This document shows positions 4,200 through 63,418 of a DNA stretch of 64,000 nucleotides, one piece after another. Each line of letters opens with the position of its first letter. The stretch's first letter is position 1. The stretch lies in NCBI RefSeq assembly GCF_040938485.1, contig NW_027270961.1:2604001-2668000 (forward strand). The letters are read 5' to 3'. Source of the DNA: Diadema antillarum. Taxonomy: Eukaryota. The notes beneath the pieces were generated by a model. That model ran no database searches and was not told the origin of the DNA. It worked only from the letters and a program-made list of their open reading frames with translations. Position numbers and translations under genes: made by a program.

Positions 4200-5252
4200 A
4201 TTCAAGTTCAAGTTCAAGTTTATTTAACCAATTCATTAAACATTTGACATTTTACAAAAGGATACAGCATTAAGAATAATGAATGGTTTGGGACCCCAAA
4301 AGAAGCAGAGCTTGTCAAAAAGGGGTCCCGGATAAACATATAAAACAAAACATACTAAAGTTTTAAACATATTAACAAGAAGTATAATAGTAACATATTT
4401 ACATAGGACAGATGCAACGCAAGCACACACACACACACACGCACACACACATTCAATCACACGCACACGTGTCACAAAACGCTCATGCACATACATGTAC
4501 AATAGTTCACATAATGAAATTGCAGAAAGATACTTTCTATTTTACTACACTTTTGAATTCAGCTTCCCTGATCAATTCTTGTTTTACAAATTTCCCTCAA
4601 GATAGATGCGACATGTACGTTTAAAGTTGGATAGTGTTGAGGCTGACCTAATTCTCAATGGCAAATTATTCCATTCTCTAATACAAACATATACAAATGA
4701 ATTTTGGGCAGTTTGAGTTCTTACAAAGGGTTGATGAATGAGATTACTTTTACGCGTATTATAAGCATGAACGGTAGAATTTAACACAAACGCATCCTTC
4801 ATGAAAGATTTCGGATCACCTTGTGTCTTAAACATAAAAATCAAGCAACTCAAGATAACAAATTTTTCAAATGGCAAAATATGAAGTTGAATAAACAATG
4901 GCAAACTTGGACTTCCATAGTTTGAATTTGTAATATACCTTACAGCTTTTTTCTGAAGAACAATCAATTTATCTATATGAGTCTTATAAGTATTTCCCCA
5001 AGCTACATTACAGTACATTAAATGAGGCATAACTATGGCATTATACAGAGTAATTAAAGTTTCTTTTGGTAAATAGAGACGTAACTTGGATAAGATACCA
5101 ACACTACGAGAAACTTTAGTACAGACGTAACTGACGTGGTCTTTCCACGATAAATATTCATCGACTATAACGCCTAGGAATCGTACATTATGGCTTCGAT
5201 CAATCTGGTTACCGCCTATTACCAGTGGAACAATGTCATTTCCTGTAAGATT
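4200..5252 (-). mobile_element. 5'-truncated L2/CR1-clade LINE (RT C-terminus, 3' UTR and tail)
   Basis: An open frame 5252-4584 reads RFLGVIVDEYLSWKDHV...GILSKLRLYLP...LYNAIVMPHLMYCNVAWG...LQKKAVRYI...WNNLPLRIRSASTLSNFKR. The 3' UTR has a stem-loop (GGGACCCC...ACAAGCTCTGCTTC...GGGGTCCC), then AATAAA and a (CTTGAA)n tail at about 4200-4225. Confidence 0.92.
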
Positions 5253-50152: not shown

Positions 50153-50312
50153 GGGCCCGTTGCATAAAAGTTACAATTATGGTAACTTTGCCATCCAATG
50201 GTAACTACCATGGCAACAATACTCAACAGCCAATCAAAATCAAGAATTCCATGGAAGTTACCATTGAATGGCAAAGTTACCATAATAGTAACTTTTATGC
50301 AACCAACGGCCC
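50153..50312. mobile_element. PIF/Harbinger MITE with CTG duplication
   Basis: ctg|GGGCCCGTTGCATAAAAGTTAC ... GTAACTTTTATGCAACCAACGGCCC|ctg. Almost wholly palindromic. Confidence 0.85.
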
Positions 50313-51940: not shown

Positions 51941-52399
51941 TTACATAATCGGAGAATGCATTTCTCTGCGACAGACGAAGCGATGTGTGTGTTCGCGCAT
52001 GCCGAACTCTAACCTCGAATATACTTTCTTTACTATGCTGTCGACAATTCCCTAGATCCCTCTTTGCTGCTGAAGTGATTCAACACCCAATAAACGGTAA
52101 AGCCAGGTATGAATGAATAGAACAAAAGGGAGGAGTACTATTGGATTTAGTGCATTCGTATCTTCGATCCCTTAGATAATATCACGTTCAGAGTCATGCA
52201 GGTTAGTCTCTATCGCTTGGATGACTCTCCCAACAAGGACGTCATGAACGGCGTCAGTTTTACAATGTTCCCGAACTCTTGTTGACTACTACTTCTTTAC
52301 TCGTCAGGCGTCAGTTCGCAGAAATTCTGTAGAACAATCATTACAGTTAGATCAAGGAGGTACTCTGCATAAATATAGTACCTCCTTAGTTAAAATCAT

Positions 52400-52418
52400 A
52401 TATATACATGTATATAGG

Positions 52419-52453
<35 letters not shown>

Positions 52454-52640
52454 CCTAATGAAAGTGAACTCGGGACTCCAAGAGAAATTCTTAATTATCC
52501 TGAAAAAGAGACATATGACAAATGGTTACACAATTCAGAAAGGGAATTATTTATTTATGCATTTATGCATTTATGCATTTATGCATTTATGCATTTATGC
52601 ATTCATTCATTCATTCATTCATTCATTCATTCATTCAGTC
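52400..52640. repeat. Microsatellite cluster (TA)n, (TTTATGCA)n, (ATTC)n
   Basis: Direct reading. Confidence 0.9.
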
Positions 52641-55004
52641 TTCTTTGAGTAAGGTTACCCTTCCATACAGTTCGCCAACTGCATGTTCCAGTCAGGCCGC
52701 AGCACGTATCAAGGGACCTGCATACATATTTTAAACAACCAAGCAGATTATCATTACATTTGTACAAAGATAAAACATGAAAATATGTATAAAAAACGAA
52801 AAACATAAAACATAGATTATTATATACCGAAATTGAAGTTGAAAAGTTTCATTGAGGACAATTAATCATACTATGTATACAGATCAAACATCGCTGTTGT
52901 TGATTTTATTTCCATATTCAGACAAACATATGCACAATTTGCAAGATAATACAGGCCTACAGATATACAGAATGAAGAAATGGAGGATTGCCCGTTCAGC
53001 CATAATTGCAAAATACGACTGTTCTTACACATGGTCCCATAAACACCGTACACCAAAACATAACGATAAAGACCGGGCTATTTTGGAGGTTTAGTAGACG
53101 GGGGGCATCATGCCCCCTCCCCCATGATCTCGGCCATGGAATGTCCGATTGTCGCCAAATTCCGCATGCACCTAGTTTATGACGTACCCTATATCCAAGA
53201 AAGCATAGTTATTTTTACGAAAATAACCATAATTTCTAACTAGAGATTGTAATTTGTCATCACTGACAAATTAAGGTGATCCGATTTTTTTTATCAATGA
53301 TTCGAGTCCTGATACTGCAAAGTCTCAGCTACAACATATCAAAATCTGAGAGAAATTCACCGTAGCATAAGTAAGATAGTGCTCGATAAAGAGAGTCATG
53401 TCAATTTTCACATCTAAAAAATTCCCTCCCATAGAGATAACACGTCATAGCGAAGATAGAAAAAGAAGTACATATGACCTTTGACCCCACTTTGCACAGA
53501 CAAGATGGCATCTGAGCAAAAAGTGGTTATTTTATGAAATGACCCCTGTAACATGGATTTTACGTGTGCAAAATATGGGAAAGATAGGTCATGTATTCAC
53601 CAAGATACAGGATGAAATATCTATGACCTTTGACCCTAATTTACATACCCAAGATGGCGTCTGATCAAGTAGTTGTTATTTTATGAAATAATGTTCGTGA
53701 CATGAACTAAACATGTGCAAAATATGGTGGTGATAGGGTATGTTTTTCTTGAGTTATTGCACATAAAGTTGCAAAAAGAAAGGAATATCTCAATACATCG
53801 AAGATAAACTTTATTTTCAACCAAGTTTTTTCACGTGATCCCGACAACGTATGAAAAAACAAAGGGCACACTTACGATAGCCCTACGTCTCAGCTACAAC
53901 ATATTAAAATCTTAGAGAAATTCACCAAAGCATAAGTGAGCTAGTGCTCGATAAAGATAGTCATGTCAATTTTCATTTCCATAAAAATTGCACTCCCATA
54001 GAGATTACACGTAAACTGGTCAAATTTGACAAGGTTACCTTCAATCCATTTTTTCGAGGTGATGTCGTCATCCAATGAAAATTGTGTATTTAAATTTATG
54101 AAAGACCATTTCATAAGCTACAACATATTGAAATTTGGGTGAAAATTGGCAAAGGAAGTGAGATACGCTCGAGTAAACTTGAAATTTGATGACGTCATTT
54201 TGAAAATTTACTTTTTTTACTTTATTAAGAAATTTGATATCTTTTAATCATTTTGTCAGCATCGCCAACCCATGAAATGACATATAAAACTCATCAGCTT
54301 TCAGAATATGTAAAGGAAATGGGGGGTCACCGTTCATCCTGACGAGTAAAATCGCATTTAAGATTTGCGGTTTTTTGGCATAGTTGCACTGTCTATTGCC
54401 ATTGACGCGCGCGCGGAATTTCAACTTTGACGGGCCCGTATGACGTCATATTGAGTCGGATTGACTTGAAACTTGGTAGAAATATTCCTTCACATTTCAG
54501 ACATTTGATCACAGTGAGAAAAATGGGAAATTTCTATTGCATATGAGCTGTGCGTGCGTATATGCGCGCGCGCGTACGCGTCCGTCCGATTTTTTCATTT
54601 TTTCAAAAAATGCTCTAAATGGTCTGAAACGTGTGCAAAAAAATTTTGGGCTTGATTGGAGCATACAAATATTTCAACGCGCGCGTACGCGCACGTTTTA
54701 AGAGAAAATATGAATTTTGACAACATGAATAGAATTCGCTTGACTTGAAATATATGTGACGTAAATTTCATTGAAAAATTCCATTCCATTAATGAGATAT
54801 GATTGAGAATGTGTTTTCATATAATGACGTCATAGTGACGTCACGGTCGACTGATCACAATGATTTTACTTGATCTGTCGTCTTTGGGACACGATACATA
54901 CATGGTATAAGTTTGAACTTGATAGGCATAGCACTTTTTGAGCTAACCTCTGCACAACTTTTGAGGAGAAATAAAGAAAGAAACAAAGAAAGAAGAATAA
55001 AGAA

Positions 55005-58000
55005 CTAGACTTGGAATTTGTCAACACTGACAAATTAGGTGATCCGATCTATTCGGAAATCAATGATTTACGTCCTGATCCCAATAGGCATGACCATAAA
55101 TGTTTCATCTGCGTTTAGGGGACATTGGCCGTGTGATGTTTGGATTCTCATTTAGAAAAGGGAGTAAGACCTGCCATCTTTGGTACCGAATTCCGTATAC
55201 ACTAACGAAGATACAGAATGAAGTATATTTGACCTTTGACCCCACTTTGCACAGACAAGATGGCATCTGAGCAAAAATTGGTTATTTTTTGAAATGATTC
55301 TTATAACATGGTCTTTGCGTGTGCAAAATATGGGAAAGATAGGACATGTATTCACCAAGATACAGGATTAAACATTTATGACCTTTGACCCTAATTTACA
55401 TACCCAAGATGGTGTCTGATCAAGTAGCTGTTATTTTATGAAATAATGTACGTAACACAAACTAAACATGTGCAAAATATGGGGGTGATAGAGGCTGTTT
55501 TTCTTGAGTTATTGCAAAGAAAGTTGCAGAAAGAAAGAAATATCTCAATACATCGTAGATAAGCTTTAATTTCAACCAAGTTTTTTAACATGATCCCGAC
55601 ATTGTATGAAAGAACTAAGGGTACATGACGATAGCCCAAAGTCTCAGCTACAACCTATTAAAATCTGGGAGAAATTTACCGAAGGGTAAGTGAGCTAGTG
55701 CTCGATACAGACAGTCATGTCAATTTTCATTTCCAGATAAACTCCACTCCAATAGAGATAACACGTAAATTGGTCAAATTTGACAAGGTTACTTTCAATC
55801 CATTTTTACGAGGTAATGACGTCACCCAATCAAAATTATGATTGAACAAAACAGAAAGAGCAAATAATAAGCTACAACATATTAAAATCTGGGAGAAATT
55901 CACCGAAGGGTAAGTAAGCTAGTGCTCGATAAAGACAATCGTGTCAATTTTCACATCTAGAAAAATTCCCTCCCATATAGATAACACGTCATAACGAAGA
56001 TACAGAAAAAAAGTACATATGACCTTTGACCCCACTTTGCACAGACAAGATGGCATCTGAGCAAAAAGTGATCATTTTGTGAAATGATTCTTGTAACATG
56101 GCCTTTGCGTGTGCAAAATATGGTAAAGATAAGACATGTATTCACCAAGATACAGGATTAAACATATATGAACTTTGACCCTAATTTACATACCCAAGAT
56201 GGTGCCCGATCAAGTAGCTGTTATTTTATGAAATAATGTACGTGACACGAACTAAACATGTGCAAAATATGGGGGTGATAGAGGCTGTTTTTCTTGAGTT
56301 ATTGCAAAGAAAGTTGCAGAAAGAAAGAAATATCTCAATACATCGTAGATAAGCTTTAATTTCAACCAAGTTTTTTAACATGATCCCGACATTGTATGAA
56401 AGAACTAAGGGTACATGACGATAGCCCAAAGTCTCAGCTACAACATATTAAAATCTGGGAGAAATTTACCGAAGGGTAAGTGAGCTAGTGCTCGATACAG
56501 ACAGTCATGTCAATTTTCATTTCCAGATAAACTCCACTCCAATAGAGATAACACGTAAATTGGTCAAATTTGACAAGGTTACTTTCAATCCATTTTTACG
56601 AGGTAATGACGTCACCCAATCAAAATTATGATTGAACAAAACAGAAAGAGCAAATAATAAGCTACAACATATTAAAATCTGGGAGAAATTCACCGAAGGG
56701 TAAGTAAGCTAGTGCTCGATAAAGACAATCGTGTCAATTTTCACATCTAGAAAAATTCCCTCCCATATAGATAACACGTCATAACGAAGATACAGAAAAA
56801 AAGTACATATGACCTTTGACCCCACTTTGCACAGACAAGATGGCATCTGAGCAAAAAGTGATCATTTTGTGAAATGATTCTTGTAACATGGCCTTTGCGT
56901 GTGCAAAATATGGTAAAGATAAGACATGTATTCACCAAGATACAGGATTAAACATATATGAACTTTGACCCTAATTTACATACCCAAGATGGTGCCCGAT
57001 CAAGTAGCTGTTATTTTATGAAATAATGTACGTGACACGAACTAAACATGTGCAAAATATGGGGGTGATAGAGGCTGTTTTTCTTGAGTTATTGCAAAGA
57101 AAGTTGCAATAAGAAAGAAATATCTCAATACATCGAAGATAAGTTTTAATTTCAACCAAGTTTTTCGACGTAATGCTGACATTGTATGAAAAAATGAAGG
57201 GCACATAACGATAGCCCAAAGTCTCAGCTACAACATATTCAAATCTGGGAGAAATTCACCGAAGCATAAGTGAGCTAGTGCTCGATAAAGATAGTCATGT
57301 CAATTTTCATTTCCAGAAAAACTGCACTCCCATAGACATAACACGTAAACTGGTCAAATTTAACAATGTTACTTTTAATCCCCTTTTACGAGGTGATGCC
57401 GTCATCCAATCAAAACGTTGTTATTATATGACTGAAAGACCATTTATTAGGCTGCAACATATTGAAATTTGGACGAAATCAACAAAAGATTAAGTGAGAT
57501 ATGCCTGAGTGAACTTGAAATTTGATGACGTCATTTTGAAAATTTACTTTTTTTACTTTATTAAGAAATTTGATACCTTTTAATCATTTTTTCAGCATCG
57601 CCAACCCATGAAATGACATGTACAACTCATCAGCTTTCAGAATATGTAAAGAAAATGGGGGGTCACTGTCCATCCTGACGAGTAAAATCGGATTTAAAAT
57701 TGGCAGTTTTTTGGTATTGTTGCACTGTATATCGCCATTGACGCGCGCGCGGAATTTCAACTTTGACGGGCCCGTATGACGTCATTTTGAGTCGGATTGA
57801 CTTGAAACTTGGTAGAAATATTTCTTGACATTTTAGACATCCGATCAAAGTGAAAAAACGGGAAATTTCTATTGCATATGAGCTGTGCGTGCGTATATGC
57901 GCGCGCGCGTACGCGTCCGTCCGATTTTTTCAATTTTTCAAAAAATGCTCCAAATGGTCTGAAACGTGTGCAAAAAAATTTTGAGCTCGATTTGAGCATA

Positions 58001-58373
58001 CAAATATTTCAACGCGCGCGTACGCGCACGTTTTAACAATGCGATGAATTTTGAAAATATGAGTAGAATTCCCTTGAAGTGAAATTAATGTGACGTAAAT
58101 TTTATTGAAAAATTCCATTCCATTAATGAGATATGATTGAAAATGTGTTTTCATATAATGACGTCATAGTGACGTCACGGTCGACTGATCACTACGATTT
58201 TACTTGACCCGTCGTTTTTGGGACATGATACATATATGGTATAATTTTGACATTGATAGGAAGTGGACTTTCTGAGCTAACCTCTGCACAACTTTTGTCC
58301 AGAAATAAAGAAGAAGAATAAAGAATCCGTACAGATACAGAAGGTGATCCGAGAGGATTCTCGGATCACCTAA
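55005..58373 (-). mobile_element. HINE-like element B (3369 bp, internal 790-bp tandem repeats)
   Basis: CTAG end at 55005-55008. 5' hairpin AGGTGATCCGAG-AGGATT-CTCGGATCACCT-AA ends at 58373. A 790-bp period is seen at 55431/56221/57011. Confidence 0.88.
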
Positions 58374-59351
58374 CTAGAGATTGTAATTTGTCATCACTGA
58401 CAAATTAAGGTGATCCGATTTTTTTTTTAATCAATGATTCGAGTCCTGATCGTAATAGGCATGACAATACAAGTTTCATCTGTGTTTAGAGACATTGGCC
58501 GTGTGAGGTTTGGATTCTCATTTAGAAAAGGGAGTCATATCTGCCATCTTTGGTACCAATTCTGTATACACTGAATAACGAAGATACAGCAACGAATACA
58601 TATGACCTTTGACCCACCTTTACACTCCCAAGATGGCATCTGAGGAAAAAGTGGTTATTTTGTGAAATGATTCTTGCGACATCGTCTATATTCGTGTGCA
58701 AAATATGGCAAAGATAGGACAGGTATTCACCAAGATGCAAAATGCAAAGTCTTAGGTACAACATAAAATCTGGGAGAAATTCACCGAAGGGTAAGTGAGA
58801 GCTAGTGCTCGATAAAGAAAAGCATGTCGATTTTCACATTAAAAAAAAATCCCTCCCATAGAGATAACACGTCATAACGAAAATACAGAAAGAAGTACAT
58901 ATGACCTTTGACCTCACTTTGCACACCCAAGATGGCGTCTGAGCAAAAAGTGGTTATTTTGTGAAATGATCCTTGTTACATGGTCTTTGTGTGTGCAAAA
59001 TATGGGAAAGATAGGACATGTATTCACCAAGATACAGGATGAAACATTTATGACCTTTGACCCTAATTTACATACCCAAGATGGTGTCTGATCAAATAGT
59101 TGTTATTTTATGAAATAATGTACGTGACATGAACTAAACATGTGCAAAATATGGGATTGATAGCCATTGTTGTTGTTCATCTATTGCACAGAAAGTAGTA
59201 GAAAGAAAGAAAAATAAAGAAAAAAATATGTTATTTTATAGAAATTTGAAGGAGAAGCATAAAAAAATCAGAAAAAGATAAAGTTAGGAAGGGAGATTAA
59301 GACTAACTAAAGAAAAAGAAGAAAAAAGTGTTTAAAAAAATGAAAAAAAAA

Positions 59352-59432
59352 TATTGGCAGGGGTGAGCCTCGAACCAGGGACCTTAGGATTACGAGTCGG
59401 ATGCGCTATGCAATGACCTATTTCATGCTCCA
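59352..59432 (-). pseudogene. tRNA-like (tRNA-Met/Thr-derived or SINE head) fragment inside element C
   Basis: TAGGTCATTGC (A-box-like), ATAGCGCA-TCCGA-CTCGTAA-TCCTA-AGGTC-CCTGGTTCGAGG (B-box-like), ...GCCA, then a T-run. The acceptor and anticodon stems do not pair, so it is not a functional tRNA. Confidence 0.6.
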
Positions 59433-60657
59433 TAGGCCCTGTGTATTAAGCAAAATGACGCTGCGTCGAAGCCACGTGCCATTTTCAACCAAGTTTTTCG
59501 ACGTGATGCCGACGTCGTATGAAAAAATGAAGGGCACACTTACGATAGCCCAAAGTCTCAGCTACAACATACTAAAATCTGGGAAAAATTCACCGAAGCG
59601 AAAGTGAGCTAGTGCTCGAAAAAGAGAGTCATGTCAATTTTCACTGCCAGAAAAACTGCTCTCCCATAGAGATAACACGTAAACTGGTCAAATTCTACAA
59701 GGATACATTCAATCCATTTTTACGAGGCGATGACGTCATCCAGTCAAAATGTTGTTTTTACATTAATGAAAGAACATTTCATAAGCTACAACATACTGAA
59801 ATATGGGAGAAAATTGGCAGAGGATAAGTGAGATACGCTCGAGTAAACTTGTAATTTGATGACGTCATTTTGAAAATTTACTTTTTTTACTTTATTAAGA
59901 AATTTGATATCTTTTAATCATTTTGTCAGCATTGCCTACCCATGAAATGACATGTACAACTCATCAGCTTTCAATATATGTAAAGAAAATGGGGGGTCAC
60001 CGTCCATCCTGACGAGTTAAATCGGATTTAAAATTGGCAGTTTTTTGGCATAGTTGCACTGTATATCGCCATTGACGCGCGCGCGGAATTTCAACTTTGA
60101 CGGCCCCGTATGACGTCATATTGAGTCGGATTGACTTGAAACGTGGTATAAATATTCCTTGACATTTCAGACATGCGATCAAAGTGAAAAAACTGGAAAT
60201 TTCAATTGCATATGAGCTGTGCGTGCGTATATGCGCGCGCGCGTACGCGTCCGTCCGATTTTTTCAATTTTTCAAAAAATGCTCCAAATGGTCTGAAACG
60301 TGTGCAAAAAAATTTTGAGCTCGATTGGAGCATACAAATATTTCAACGCGCGCGTACGCGCACGTTTTAAGAGAAAATATGAATTTTGAGAACATGAGTA
60401 GAATGCGCATAACTTGAAATATATGTGACGTAAATTTCATTGAAAAATTCTATTTCATTAATGAGATATGATTGAGAATGTGTTTTCATATAATGACGTC
60501 ATAGTGACGTCACGGTCGACTGATCACAATGATACATTAGATTTGCCGTCTTTGGGACATGATGCATACATGATATAATTTTGAAATTGACAGGCAGCGG
60601 ACTTTCTGAGCTAACCTCTGCACAACTTTTGAGGAGAAATAAAGAAGAAGAAGAAGA

Positions 60658-62467
60658 CTAGAGATTGTAATTTGTCATCACTGACAAATTAAGGTGATCC
60701 GATCTTTTTTTTTAATCAATGATTCGAGTCCTGATACTGCAAAGTCTCAGCTACAACATATTAAAATCTGAGAGAAATTCACCGAAGCATAAGTAAGATA
60801 GTGCTCGATAAAGAGAGTCATGTCAATTTTCACATCTAAAAAATTTCCTCCCATAGAGATAACACGTCATAGCAAAGATAGAAAAAGAAGTACATATGAC
60901 CTTTGACCCCACTTTGCACAGACAAGATGGCATCTGAGCAAAAAGTGGTTATTTTATGAAATGATCCCTGTAACATGGTCTTTACGTGTGCAAAATATGG
61001 GAAAGATAGGACATGTATTCACCAAGATACAGGATGAAACATCTATGACCTTTGACCCTAATTTACATACCCAAGATGGCGTCTGATCAAGTAGTTGTAA
61101 TCTTATGAAATAATTTTCGTGACATGAACTAAACATGTGCAAAATATGAAGGTGATAGGGGCTGTTTTTCTTGAGTTATTGCAAAGAAAGTTGCAAAAAG
61201 AAAGAAATATTTCAATACATCGAAGATAAACTTTAATTTCAACCAAGTTTTTTTACGTGATCCCGACAACGTATGAAAAAACGAAGGGCACACTTACGAT
61301 AGCCCTACATCTCAGCTACAACATATTAAAATCTTAGAGAAATTCACCGAAGCATAAGTGAGCTAGTGCTCGATAAAGATAGTCATGTCAATTTTCATTT
61401 CCATAAAAATTGCACTCCCATAGAGATTACACGTAAACTGGTCAAATTTGACAAGGTTACCTTCAATCCATTTTTTCGAGGTGATGTCGTAATCAAATCA
61501 AAATTGTTTAATTACATTTATGAAAGAACATTTCATAAGCTACAACATATTGAAATTTGGGTGAAAATTGGCAAAGGATTAGTGAGATACGCTCGAGTAA
61601 ACTTGAAATTTGATGACGTCATTTTGAAAATTTACTTTTTTTACTTTATTAAGAAATTTGATATCTTTTAATCATTTTATCAGCATAGCCAGCCCATGAA
61701 ATGACATGTACAACTCATCACCTTTCAGAATATGTAAAGAAAATGGGGGGTCACCGTCCATCCTGACGAGTAAAATCGGATTTAAAATTGGCGGTTTTTT
61801 GGCATAGTTGCACTGTGTATCCCCATTGACGCACGCGCGGAATTTTGAATTTGACGGGCCCGTATGACGTCATATTGAGTCGGATCGACTTGAAACTTGG
61901 TAGAAACATTCCTTGAAATTTCGGACATCCGATCCGTGTGAAAAAATTGAAAATTTCTATTTCATATTAGCTGTGCGTGCGTATATGTGCGCGCGCGTAC
62001 GCGTCCGTCCAATTTTTTCAATTTTTCAAAAAATGCTCCAAATGGTCTGAAACGTGTGCAAAAAAAATTTGAGCTGGATTTGAGCATACAAATATTTCAA
62101 CGCGCGCGTACGCGCGCGTTTTGAGATAAAAATGAATTTTGAGAATATGAGTAGAATGCGCTTAACTTGAAATATATGTGACGTAAATTTCATTGAAATA
62201 TTCCATTCCATTAATGAGATATGCATGAAAATGTGTTTTCATATAATGACGTCATAGTGACGTCACGGTCGACTGATCACTATGATTTTACTTGCGCTGT
62301 CGTCTTTGCGACATGATACATATATGTTATAAGTCTGACATTGAGAGGCAATGCACTTTCTGAGCTAACCTCTGCACAACTTTTGAGGAGAAATAAAGAA
62401 GAAGAAGAAAAACAAAGAATCCGTACAGATACAGAAGGTGATCCGAGAGGATACTCGGATCACCTAA
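60658..62467 (-). mobile_element. HINE-like element D (innermost, intact, 1810 bp)
   Basis: CTAG end at 60658 and complete 5' hairpin ending 62467. Same length and layout as the reconstructed A. Confidence 0.88.
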
Positions 62468-63418
62468 AAAACAAAGAATCCGTACAGATACAGAAGGTGA
62501 TCCGAGAGGATACTCGGATCACCTAATCAGTACAGATACAGAAGGTGATCCGAGAGGATACTCGGATCACCTAATTAAAGCTAATTGATCATGCAAGTAT
62601 GCTCATTTTTCTTGATTTTTTATTTTTTGTTTATTTTGTGCCAATATGGTTGTCTAGTGATCCCTTAAATGTGAAATATGTGAAACTGAAAACTGATTGT
62701 CTAAGACCAAAATATAGGTGATTAATCAAACACTTATATTCGTTATACATATCAATCTCGCATATATATATCTCAGTCTTTCTTATGTAAATTATTGTTT
62801 TCATTTCTTATTTTTCTATTGTTTTATGTTTTTCATTTTCAGAAAAATTAATTTCAGCATCAGATCAGATTTTAATAGCTGAAAAACAGACTGCAAGAAA
62901 AATCAAAGTAACACAGAATCTTGCAAAACCTCATTCATTTTACACATAAACACATACAAATACGCCATTTTTGACTGACATGTGACCGTAAAATGTCAAG
63001 ACAACACCATGACCGCTGCAGGTATATACGCATATTAGGTATCAAAAGATGCGTAAGACCCTAAAGAAAAAAAAAGTCATGACGTCTTGGGGTGAGATCT
63101 TATAAATTCTGGAAATGATCGCAAAATTTACGGAGGGGGGCAAATTTCCGGGGGGGGGGGGGGCATGATGGCCCCAGTCTTTTTATAGGGTTAAGCACAA
63201 GATATAGAGGTGGAGAAGTTGACAACCGTTATATCAACTCAGTTATATAAAGTTATAGAGGTGAGGGTCAAAATTGCACTCATTGCAATAGATTTTAAGA
63301 CAACATCTATTGTTAAAGCTTACAATTTACATTTTTTCTTAAACACATAAAAGTTTTTACAACCTGGACATTATAGGCCTAGGTCTTGTTCCAAAGCTTT
63401 GACGTGTGAAGATCAAAC

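What the first reader, a model, noticed from the sequence alone, without database searches (positions are those of the whole stretch)
53240..62574. Russian-doll nest of four Helentron-type elements, A[B,C[D]], with exact end book-keeping
What looks like a 9.3-kb satellite resolves into four minus-strand non-autonomous rolling-circle elements. There are four 3' ends (subTIR, hairpin, CTAG at 53240, 55005, 58374, 60658) and four 5' ends (TT plus a 12-bp fold-back AGGTGATCCGAG/CTCGGATCACCT ending at 58373, 62467, 62526, 62574). Removing D rejoins C (…GAAGA|AAAACAAAG). Removing B and C rejoins A (…AATAAAGAA|TCAGTACAG). Removing A rejoins the host (…TTTCTAA|TTAAAGC). No junction needs a target duplication, which defines the element precisely as 5'-TTAGGTG...CTAG-3'. 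Iterated self-insertion, rather than simple concatemer formation or unequal crossover, would be a distinct route to building large repeat blocks. Helentron/HINE architecture is established knowledge; the nesting is read from the sequence; the mechanism is inferred.
Basis: partly seen in the sequence, partly recalled or inferred. Interest (0 to 1): 0.85.

Follow-up and report, generated by a model that had tools for sequence, protein, structure and literature searches.

The report
Nested stack of four Helentron-type transposons
A 9.3-kb repeat block is four copies of one non-coding rolling-circle (Helentron-type) transposon that inserted into each other's T-rich 5' region; it is a clean example of ordinary transposon nesting, not a new kind of element.

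Summary
There are four CTAG 3' ends (53240, 55005, 58374, 60658) and four 5' fold-backs (ending 58373, 62467, 62526, 62574).

Joining 53240-55004 to 62527-62574 gives an 1813-nt element. It is colinear with the intact 1810-nt copy D (93.7% identical). Joining 58374-60657 to 62468-62526 gives a 2343-nt element that is colinear with D except for one CTT microsatellite unit. No junction carries a target duplication.

The anatomy matches published non-autonomous Helentrons (HINE/DINE-1-like). The 11-nt subTIR sits 2 nt from the 5' end and has a complementary inverted repeat beside it. A CTT microsatellite, central tandem repeats and a 3' subTIR follow. A 10-bp hairpin ends 10 nt before the 3' terminus.

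Nesting by successive insertion is the best reading. Three claims need trimming:
- The ends are fixed only to within one T.
- About 1.6 kb of B comes from an internal 790-bp tandem duplication, not from insertion.

Both break points lie in the most T-rich tract of the element strand. That matches the known T-rich target preference and explains the shared orientation. Array building by repeated insertion is already described for other transposons. Interest is modest. The scan had also noted these stacked hairpins separately (s1-220865).

The parts
53240..55004 (-). A1: body and 3' end of the outermost element A (element nt 49-1813). On the element strand it ends in the 3' subTIR TCGGATCACCT, a 10-bp hairpin and CAATCTCTAG.
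   Evidence: Aligns to D 1-1762 at 93.7%. Termini printed. Hairpin fold.
55005..58373 (-). B: complete 3369-nt element with the most divergent ends (9-bp 3' stem, 13-bp 5' fold-back). It holds a 790-bp internal tandem duplication.
   Evidence: Identity at offset 790 is 0.92-0.97, with a 663-nt exact run at 55656 vs 56446.
58374..60657 (-). C1: body and 3' end of element C (element nt 60-2343). It includes a private 270-bp segment at 59213-59482.
   Evidence: Aligns to D 580-1752 at 90.4% and to D 1-78 at 98.7%. The private segment has no other copy in the window.
60658..62467 (-). D: complete, uninterrupted 1810-nt element, the innermost of the nest.
   Evidence: Both termini are present and fold.
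62468..62526 (-). C2: the 59-nt 5' end of C (TT, a 12-bp fold-back, a second small hairpin, then TTCTTTGTTTT).
   Evidence: 100% identical to D's first 59 nt. Rejoined C is colinear with D apart from one CTT.
62527..62574 (-). A2: the 48-nt 5' end of A.
   Evidence: One difference from D in 48 nt. Rejoined A matches B at 13/13 nt after the junction.
53233..53239 (.). Host flank next to A's 3' end (TTTCTAA on +). With 62575-62581 it forms the inferred empty site.
   Evidence: The flank shares CTAA/TTAG with the element's 5' end, a 4-nt microhomology (blast overlap 497-500).
62575..62581 (.). Host flank next to A's 5' end (TTAAAGC on +).

Best explanation
Four copies of one family of non-autonomous Helentron-type (HINE/DINE-1-like) rolling-circle transposons lie on the minus strand as a nest made by successive insertions. 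Element A entered an AT-rich host site. Elements B and C entered A between element nt 48 and 49, either as two hits at the same point or as a C-B head-to-tail dimer. Element D entered C between nt 59 and 60. Each incoming copy was integrated without duplicating or deleting target bases, as expected for an HUH-nuclease/helicase mechanism working through a single-stranded intermediate. Both internal targets lie at the start of the element's own CTT/T-rich microsatellite, just 3' of the two 5' hairpins. This is the most T-rich tract of the element strand. The known T-rich/TT target preference of these elements would therefore make a resident copy a target for the next one, in the same orientation. 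The result is an almost-tandem array with orphan 5' hairpins stacked at one edge. Shown here: the anatomy, the colinear rejoining, the absence of target duplication, and the T-rich position of the break points. Inferred: the enzyme, the single-stranded intermediate, the order of B versus C, and the generality of the hotspot.
For: End motifs and coordinates come, and the hairpin folds. Rejoined A is 1813 nt against 1810 nt for D at 93.7% identity. A1 covers D 1-1762 and A2 covers D 1761-1810. The alignment shows no gap at 48|49 against B, and only a microsatellite-unit difference near 59|60 against D. Swapping the pairs would need crossing insertions and creates gaps of 2 to 11 nt. In A, the 16 nt downstream of the break are in the top 1% of T-rich windows. 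In intact D, all eight top T-rich windows start at nt 48-56. No ORF of 110 aa or more lies in the nest. The architecture matches the published HINE description: subTIR 2-4 nt from the 5' end, a 3' palindrome 8-35 nt from the 3' end, a microsatellite, central repeats, no target modification and a T-rich/TT target (PMC4067079 sections 5-6; PMC7492417; T-T for HLE2 in PMC11417382).
Against: This is a single locus. No solo copy, empty allele or autonomous partner could be retrieved, so the termini rest on internal consistency only. The break points lie in a length-variable microsatellite, so the rejoining of C is exact only to one CTT unit. Two elements at the very same nucleotide of A need either a strong hotspot or dimer mobilisation, and neither was tested. 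Under either allowed register the three targets are not uniform: A|T, A|T, T|T in one, and T|T, T|T, T|C in the other. The hotspot inference rests on two or three events. The assembly cannot be checked here.
Confidence: 0.82

Rival explanations
1. The block is a head-to-tail tandem array made by missed termination or unequal crossover. Local slippage then multiplied the 5' hairpin, and two monomers happen to be 5'-truncated.
For: TRF reports 62408-62574 as a 59-nt repeat of 3.0 copies. C2 is 100% identical to the adjacent end of D. One true head-to-tail junction exists, C|B at 58373/58374. Tandem Helitron arrays from bypassed terminators are described (PMC4067079). B shows that unequal exchange does act here.
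Against: This model needs two truncations at nt 49 and nt 60 that happen to complement orphan pieces of 48 and 59 nt. It also needs an 11-nt deletion in the third 'unit' that happens to be supplied by the end of A1. The C/D identity extends about 55 nt beyond the break into C1, so it is not a mark of local duplication. The copies are 6-10% diverged and belong to two structural subtypes, so they are not monomers of one recent array.
Confidence: 0.06
2. The block is an assembly artefact, with reads from dispersed, similar copies wrongly joined in a repeat-rich stretch.
For: The window contains an N gap at 14720-14890, so the assembly is not gapless. B holds an almost perfect ~860-bp internal duplicate that could be an assembly product. 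The three stacked hairpins are near-identical.
Against: The four copies differ by 6-10% and in module content, which is enough for assemblers to keep them apart. Random misjoins would not give base-exact complementary break points at element termini. There are no N runs inside the block.
Confidence: 0.07
3. The elements are nested as described but are not moved by a Helentron. They could be a cut-and-paste MITE family or a canonical-Helitron relative.
For: The 3' end is CTAG preceded by a hairpin 10 nt upstream, as in canonical Helitrons. In one register two of the three targets are A|T. No Rep/helicase-endonuclease gene with these ends was found.
Against: There is no target duplication at three natural empty sites, which argues against cut-and-paste MITEs. 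The 5' end is TTAGG rather than TC. The asymmetric subTIR with a 5' inverted repeat, microsatellite and central repeats is the HINE layout, not the Helitron one.
Confidence: 0.05

Closest known systems
HINE / DINE-1-like non-autonomous Helentrons (Thomas et al. 2014, PMC4067079)
   Same: An 11-nt subTIR sits 2 nt from the 5' end, with a complementary IR beside it. There is a microsatellite, central tandem repeats and a 3' subTIR followed by a palindrome close to the 3' end. The elements have no coding capacity, cause no target modification, and show T-rich/TT targets with T's at the boundaries.
   Different: The 3' terminus is CTAG, as in canonical Helitrons. The copies are long (1.8-3.4 kb). 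No partner Helentron was identified here.
Cg_HINE / pearl elements of oysters (PMC7492417)
   Same: The modular layout is the same: a left flank with subTIR, IR and microsatellite, an array of satellite-like central repeats, and a right flank with subTIR and palindrome. Subfamilies differ by module.
   Different: There is no sequence relation. That paper discusses growth through the central repeats and recombination, not insertion of elements into each other.
Tandem TE dimers by double insertion (McGurk and Barbash 2018, PMC5932611) and microsatellite-targeted MULE arrays, SaTar (PMC5907723)
   Same: Repeated insertion at a preferred site builds multimeric arrays that can seed satellites. SaTar elements are associated with microsatellites and target them.
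   Different: Those are P, hobo, retroelement and MULE systems. SaTar arrays are strictly non-nested. Here the target lies 48-59 nt inside the resident copy, so orphan 5' ends stack up.
Tandem Helitron arrays in Myotis and Bombyx, as cited in PMC4067079
   Same: These are same-orientation clusters of rolling-circle elements lying directly next to each other. The C|B junction here is of that kind.
   Different: Those arrays are attributed to bypass of the termination signal. The other junctions here are insertions into a resident copy.
Tsp elements of Strongylocentrotus purpuratus (Cohen et al. 1985, cited in PMC4067079 as DINE-1-like)
   Same: They are an invertebrate-deuterostome DINE-1-like family, according to the citing paper.
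   Different: They were not compared. The paper is not held and the organism of this window is unknown to me.

Membership tests
HINE (Helentron-associated non-autonomous element) | 11-15 bp subterminal inverted repeats, with the 5' copy 2-4 nt from the terminus | tested here: met
   AGGTGATCCGA starts at nt 3 in all four copies. Its complement TCGGATCACCT lies near the 3' end.
HINE (Helentron-associated non-autonomous element) | The 3' subTIR is subterminal and followed by a short palindrome 8-35 nt from the 3' terminus | tested here: met
   The subTIR starts 45 nt from the 3' end. A 10-bp stem (9 bp in B) ends 10 nt before the terminus. Folds are -7.7 to -11.8 kcal/mol.
HINE (Helentron-associated non-autonomous element) | An inverted repeat complementary to the 5' subTIR (DINE-1 type), a microsatellite and central tandem repeats | tested here: met
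   A 12-13-bp fold-back has z of -6 to -7. A CTT-rich microsatellite starts at nt ~49. Internal repeats have periods of about 149, 566 and 790 nt.
HINE (Helentron-associated non-autonomous element) | No target-site modification, with insertion in T-rich sequence or a TT dinucleotide | tested here: met
   Three reconstructed empty sites show no duplication or loss. The internal targets are in the most T-rich tract. Whether the cut is T|T or N|TT is unresolved.
HINE (Helentron-associated non-autonomous element) | No coding capacity | tested here: met
   No ORF of 110 aa or more lies in 53240-62574.
HINE (Helentron-associated non-autonomous element) | An autonomous Helentron (Rep-helicase-APE endonuclease) with the same termini exists in the genome | not testable with these tools
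   Only this 64-kb window is available. None of the ten longest ORFs has a Pfam hit. Metagenome scans gave only chance matches.
Canonical Helitron (HLE1) | 5'-TC ... CTRR-3' ends, no inverted repeats, insertion between A and T | tested here: not met
   The 3' CTAG and a hairpin 10 nt upstream are present. However, the 5' end is TTAGG and an 11-nt subTIR is present. The targets are not uniformly A|T.
Satellite / simple tandem array | Complete monomers joined head to tail throughout | tested here: not met
   Only one of the internal junctions (C|B) is head to tail. The others join a terminus to an internal position.

The most novel reading that the evidence does not exclude
This HINE family may have a genuine self-targeting hotspot. 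Its own 5' T-rich microsatellite, just after the two 5' hairpins, would attract new copies in the same orientation. The family would then routinely build pseudo-tandem arrays marked by stacked orphan 5' hairpins. That is a countable, mechanism-specific route from dispersed Helentron elements to satellite-like blocks. Read-through from an orphan 5' end to the next 3' end could also mobilise chimeric copies with multiple 5' hairpins.
Probability: 0.3. Interest if true: 0.45.

Novelty: new member of a known kind. Interest (0 to 1): 0.27.

Why it matters
The nest supplies three built-in empty-site controls for one Helentron-type family. These narrow the termini from five possible registers to two. 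They also show insertion without target duplication and locate the targets in the element's own T-rich tract. This is useful for annotating the family and for counting self-insertions genome-wide. It does not change what is known about Helentrons, or about how transposons nest and seed repeat arrays.

Tried and rejected
1. I looked for other copies outside the window. Two metagenome scans used the 5' fold-back as the pattern. The strict pattern found nothing. The loose pattern found four GC-rich or unrelated contigs with no blast similarity to the elements. These are chance palindromes and were rejected.

2. I looked for other copies, solo ends or a paralogous empty site inside the window and found none. 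The lone CGGATCACCT at 4812 has no accompanying feature.

3. I looked for an autonomous partner in the window. There are 15 ORFs of 110 aa or more, and the ten longest have no Pfam hit.

4. It is uninformative, because C and D are identical over nt 1-~118 on both sides of the break and A2 has only a private change.

5. I tested swapped pairings (A2+C1 and C2+A1). They would need crossing insertions and leave gaps of 2 to 11 nt, so they were rejected. A2+C1 aligns to B deceptively well, because the microsatellite varies in length.

6. I tested whether the tRNA-like piece in C's private segment is a tRNA or SINE. ARAGORN and Rfam call nothing.

7. The 1985 Tsp transposon paper is not held.

8. 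Notes of this scan on the same genome mention many Helentron-like elements with internal motif arrays. Only their titles were shown, so none could be tested. The stacked hairpins of this locus were also noted separately.
Full report
**Observation**

I read 52800-63000 and searched the whole window for the end motifs.
- On the + strand AGGTGATCCG occurs at 53274, 55037, 58342, 58408, 60692, 62436, 62495 and 62543.
- Its complement occurs at 58362, 62456, 62515 and 62563. A lone extra copy at 4812 has none of the other features.
- The 3' hairpin arm AATTTGTCA occurs only at 53251, 55015, 58385 and 60669.

As single-stranded DNA the 5' ends fold into a 12-13-bp fold-back followed by a second small hairpin. 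These folds have energies of -14.4 to -16.2 kcal/mol and z-scores of -6 to -7. The 3' ends form a 9-10-bp hairpin that ends 10 nt before the terminal CTAG, at -7.7 to -11.8 kcal/mol.

**Book-keeping**

In element (minus-strand) order the block reads A2 (48 nt), C2 (59 nt), D (1810 nt, intact), C1, B (3369 nt, intact), A1.

*Element A*
- A1+A2 is 1813 nt, against 1810 nt for D.
- A1 aligns to D 1-1762 at 93.7% and A2 to D 1761-1810.
- Across the A junction (nt 48|49) there is no gap relative to B. The 13 nt after the junction are identical to B.

*Element C*
- C1+C2 is 2343 nt.
- Across its junction (59|60) it is identical to D except for one extra CTT unit in a microsatellite.
- That microsatellite differs in length among all four copies.

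*Target duplication and alternative pairings*
- No pair of flanks shares more than one base, so there is no target duplication.
- The alternative pairing (A2 with C1, C2 with A1) would require crossing insertions.
- It also leaves gaps of 2 to 11 nt.
- A2+C1 aligns to B with only a 2-nt gap, because the microsatellite varies in length. This shows that 'exact' must be read with the microsatellite in mind.

**Why nesting rather than slippage or a simple tandem array**

TRF reports the three stacked 5' pieces as a 59-nt repeat. C2 is 100% identical to D's end. A slippage model, however, needs several coincidences:
- two bodies truncated at exactly nt 49 and nt 60;
- an 11-nt deletion in the third unit that the end of A1 happens to supply.

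The C/D identity is also not confined to C2. It runs to about nt 118, roughly 55 nt into C1, and then drops to 80%. A2 carries only one private base.

The four copies are 89-93% identical over their shared 1.25 kb. They fall into two structural subtypes. A and D lack a 3'-internal module of roughly 130-160 nt (about 55080-55205 in B and 58451-58575 in C) that B and C share. They are therefore independent copies, not monomers of one recent array.

**What fixes the ends, and what does not**

The host site shares TTAG with the element's 5' end, so the host junctions alone allow five registers. The site in A allows shifts of 0-2 nt and the site in C allows 0-1 (derived; the host microhomology is visible). 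Two registers survive: TTAGGTG...CTAG and TAGGTG...CTAGT. The targets are then A|T, A|T, T|T in the first, or T|T, T|T, T|C in the second.

**What it is**

The layout matches the published description of non-autonomous Helentrons (PMC4067079). It also matches the oyster Cg_HINE modules (PMC7492417). The matching features are:
- subTIR 2-4 nt from the 5' end, with a complementary IR beside it;
- a microsatellite and central tandem repeats;
- a 3' subTIR followed by a palindrome 8-35 nt from the terminus;
- T-rich/TT targets and no target modification.

No ORF of 110 aa or more lies in the block. The window holds no recognisable Rep/helicase gene, so the autonomous partner is untested. The terminal CTAG with a hairpin 10 nt upstream recalls canonical Helitrons. 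The 5' TTAGG and the subTIR exclude that family.

**How it most likely arose**

Both internal break points sit at the start of the element's own T-rich microsatellite.
- In A, the 16 nt downstream of the break are in the top 1% of T-rich windows.
- In the intact copy D, all eight most T-rich windows start at nt 48-56.

Given the published preference for T-rich targets, a resident copy offers a strand-specific target just 3' of its 5' hairpins. This explains the common orientation and the stacking of orphan 5' ends.

B and C occupy the same nucleotide of A. One possibility is that the junction was hit twice; the first insertion regenerates N|TT there because the element starts with TT. The other is that a C-B dimer moved as a unit. 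I cannot tell which. I also cannot tell whether D entered C before or after C entered A.

The enzyme and the single-stranded intermediate are inferred from the family, not shown here.

**Not all growth is by insertion**

B is long because of an internal 790-bp tandem duplication. Identity at that offset is 0.92-0.97, with a 663-nt exact run at 55656 vs 56446. The duplication lies between copies of a short internal motif. This is ordinary unequal exchange, or possibly an assembly product.

**Comparison and novelty**

Nesting of transposons is commonplace.
- Clusters of Helitrons and HINEs lying directly next to each other are discussed in PMC4067079.
- Array formation by repeated insertion at a preferred site, as a seed for satellites, is described for Drosophila transposons (PMC5932611).
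- The same is described for microsatellite-targeting MULEs (PMC5907723).

This locus adds a tidy example for a Helentron-type family. It has built-in empty sites and hints at a self-targeting hotspot, based on two or three events. I rate it a new member of a known kind, of modest interest.

**Limits**

No other copy of the family could be retrieved. The window has none and the metagenome scans gave only chance palindromes. The assembly could not be checked.

Notes from this scan on the same genome suggest that Helentron-like elements with internal motif arrays are common there. These are leads only. The stacked hairpins of this locus were also noted separately by the scan (s1-220865).

Noticed in passing
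window 53240-62574: The elements are loaded with transcription-factor-like motifs. They hold 19 perfect CRE palindromes (TGACGTCA) and 11 DR1-like direct repeats (TGACCTTTGACC). They also hold 11 AAGATGGC/GCCATCTT motifs and 18 CGCGCGCG runs. The remaining 54.7 kb of the window has 0, 2, 4 and 0 of these. The segments carrying the CRE pairs are 95-100% conserved among all four copies.
   Followed up: partly
window 55460-57108: Inside B, a 790-bp unit is tandemly duplicated almost perfectly (55460-56318 vs 56250-57108, with a 663-nt exact run). It is either a very recent unequal exchange or an assembly artefact.
   Followed up: partly
window 59213-59482: Copy C has a private 270-bp segment that is T-rich on the element strand. 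It replaces a short stretch of the other copies and contains a tRNA-like 3' part ending in TGCCA on the minus strand. ARAGORN and Rfam call nothing, and no other copy exists in the window.
   Followed up: partly
window 53236-53239 and 62571-62574: The host target and the element's 5' end share TTAG (CTAA on +). This 4-nt microhomology may be chance or may reflect what the nuclease cuts. It is not seen at the two internal targets.
   Followed up: no
window 50158-50306: An AT-rich perfect-looking palindrome hits several unrelated miRNA-precursor models on both strands, all well below their gathering scores. It is probably a MITE-like fold-back, not a miRNA.
   Followed up: no
window 52398-52635: Just upstream of the nest there is an (AT)26 tract and ten copies of ATTTATGC.
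   Followed up: no
window 14720-14890: This is the only N run in the window (171 nt). It was left untouched.
   Followed up: no
elements A-D, element nt 1-1260: Identity between copies is mosaic. C=D is 100% over nt 1-~118 and then 80%. A=D is 100% in two 100-nt blocks, and B=C is 100% in one. This suggests recombination or gene conversion among family members, or locally constrained segments.
   Followed up: partly
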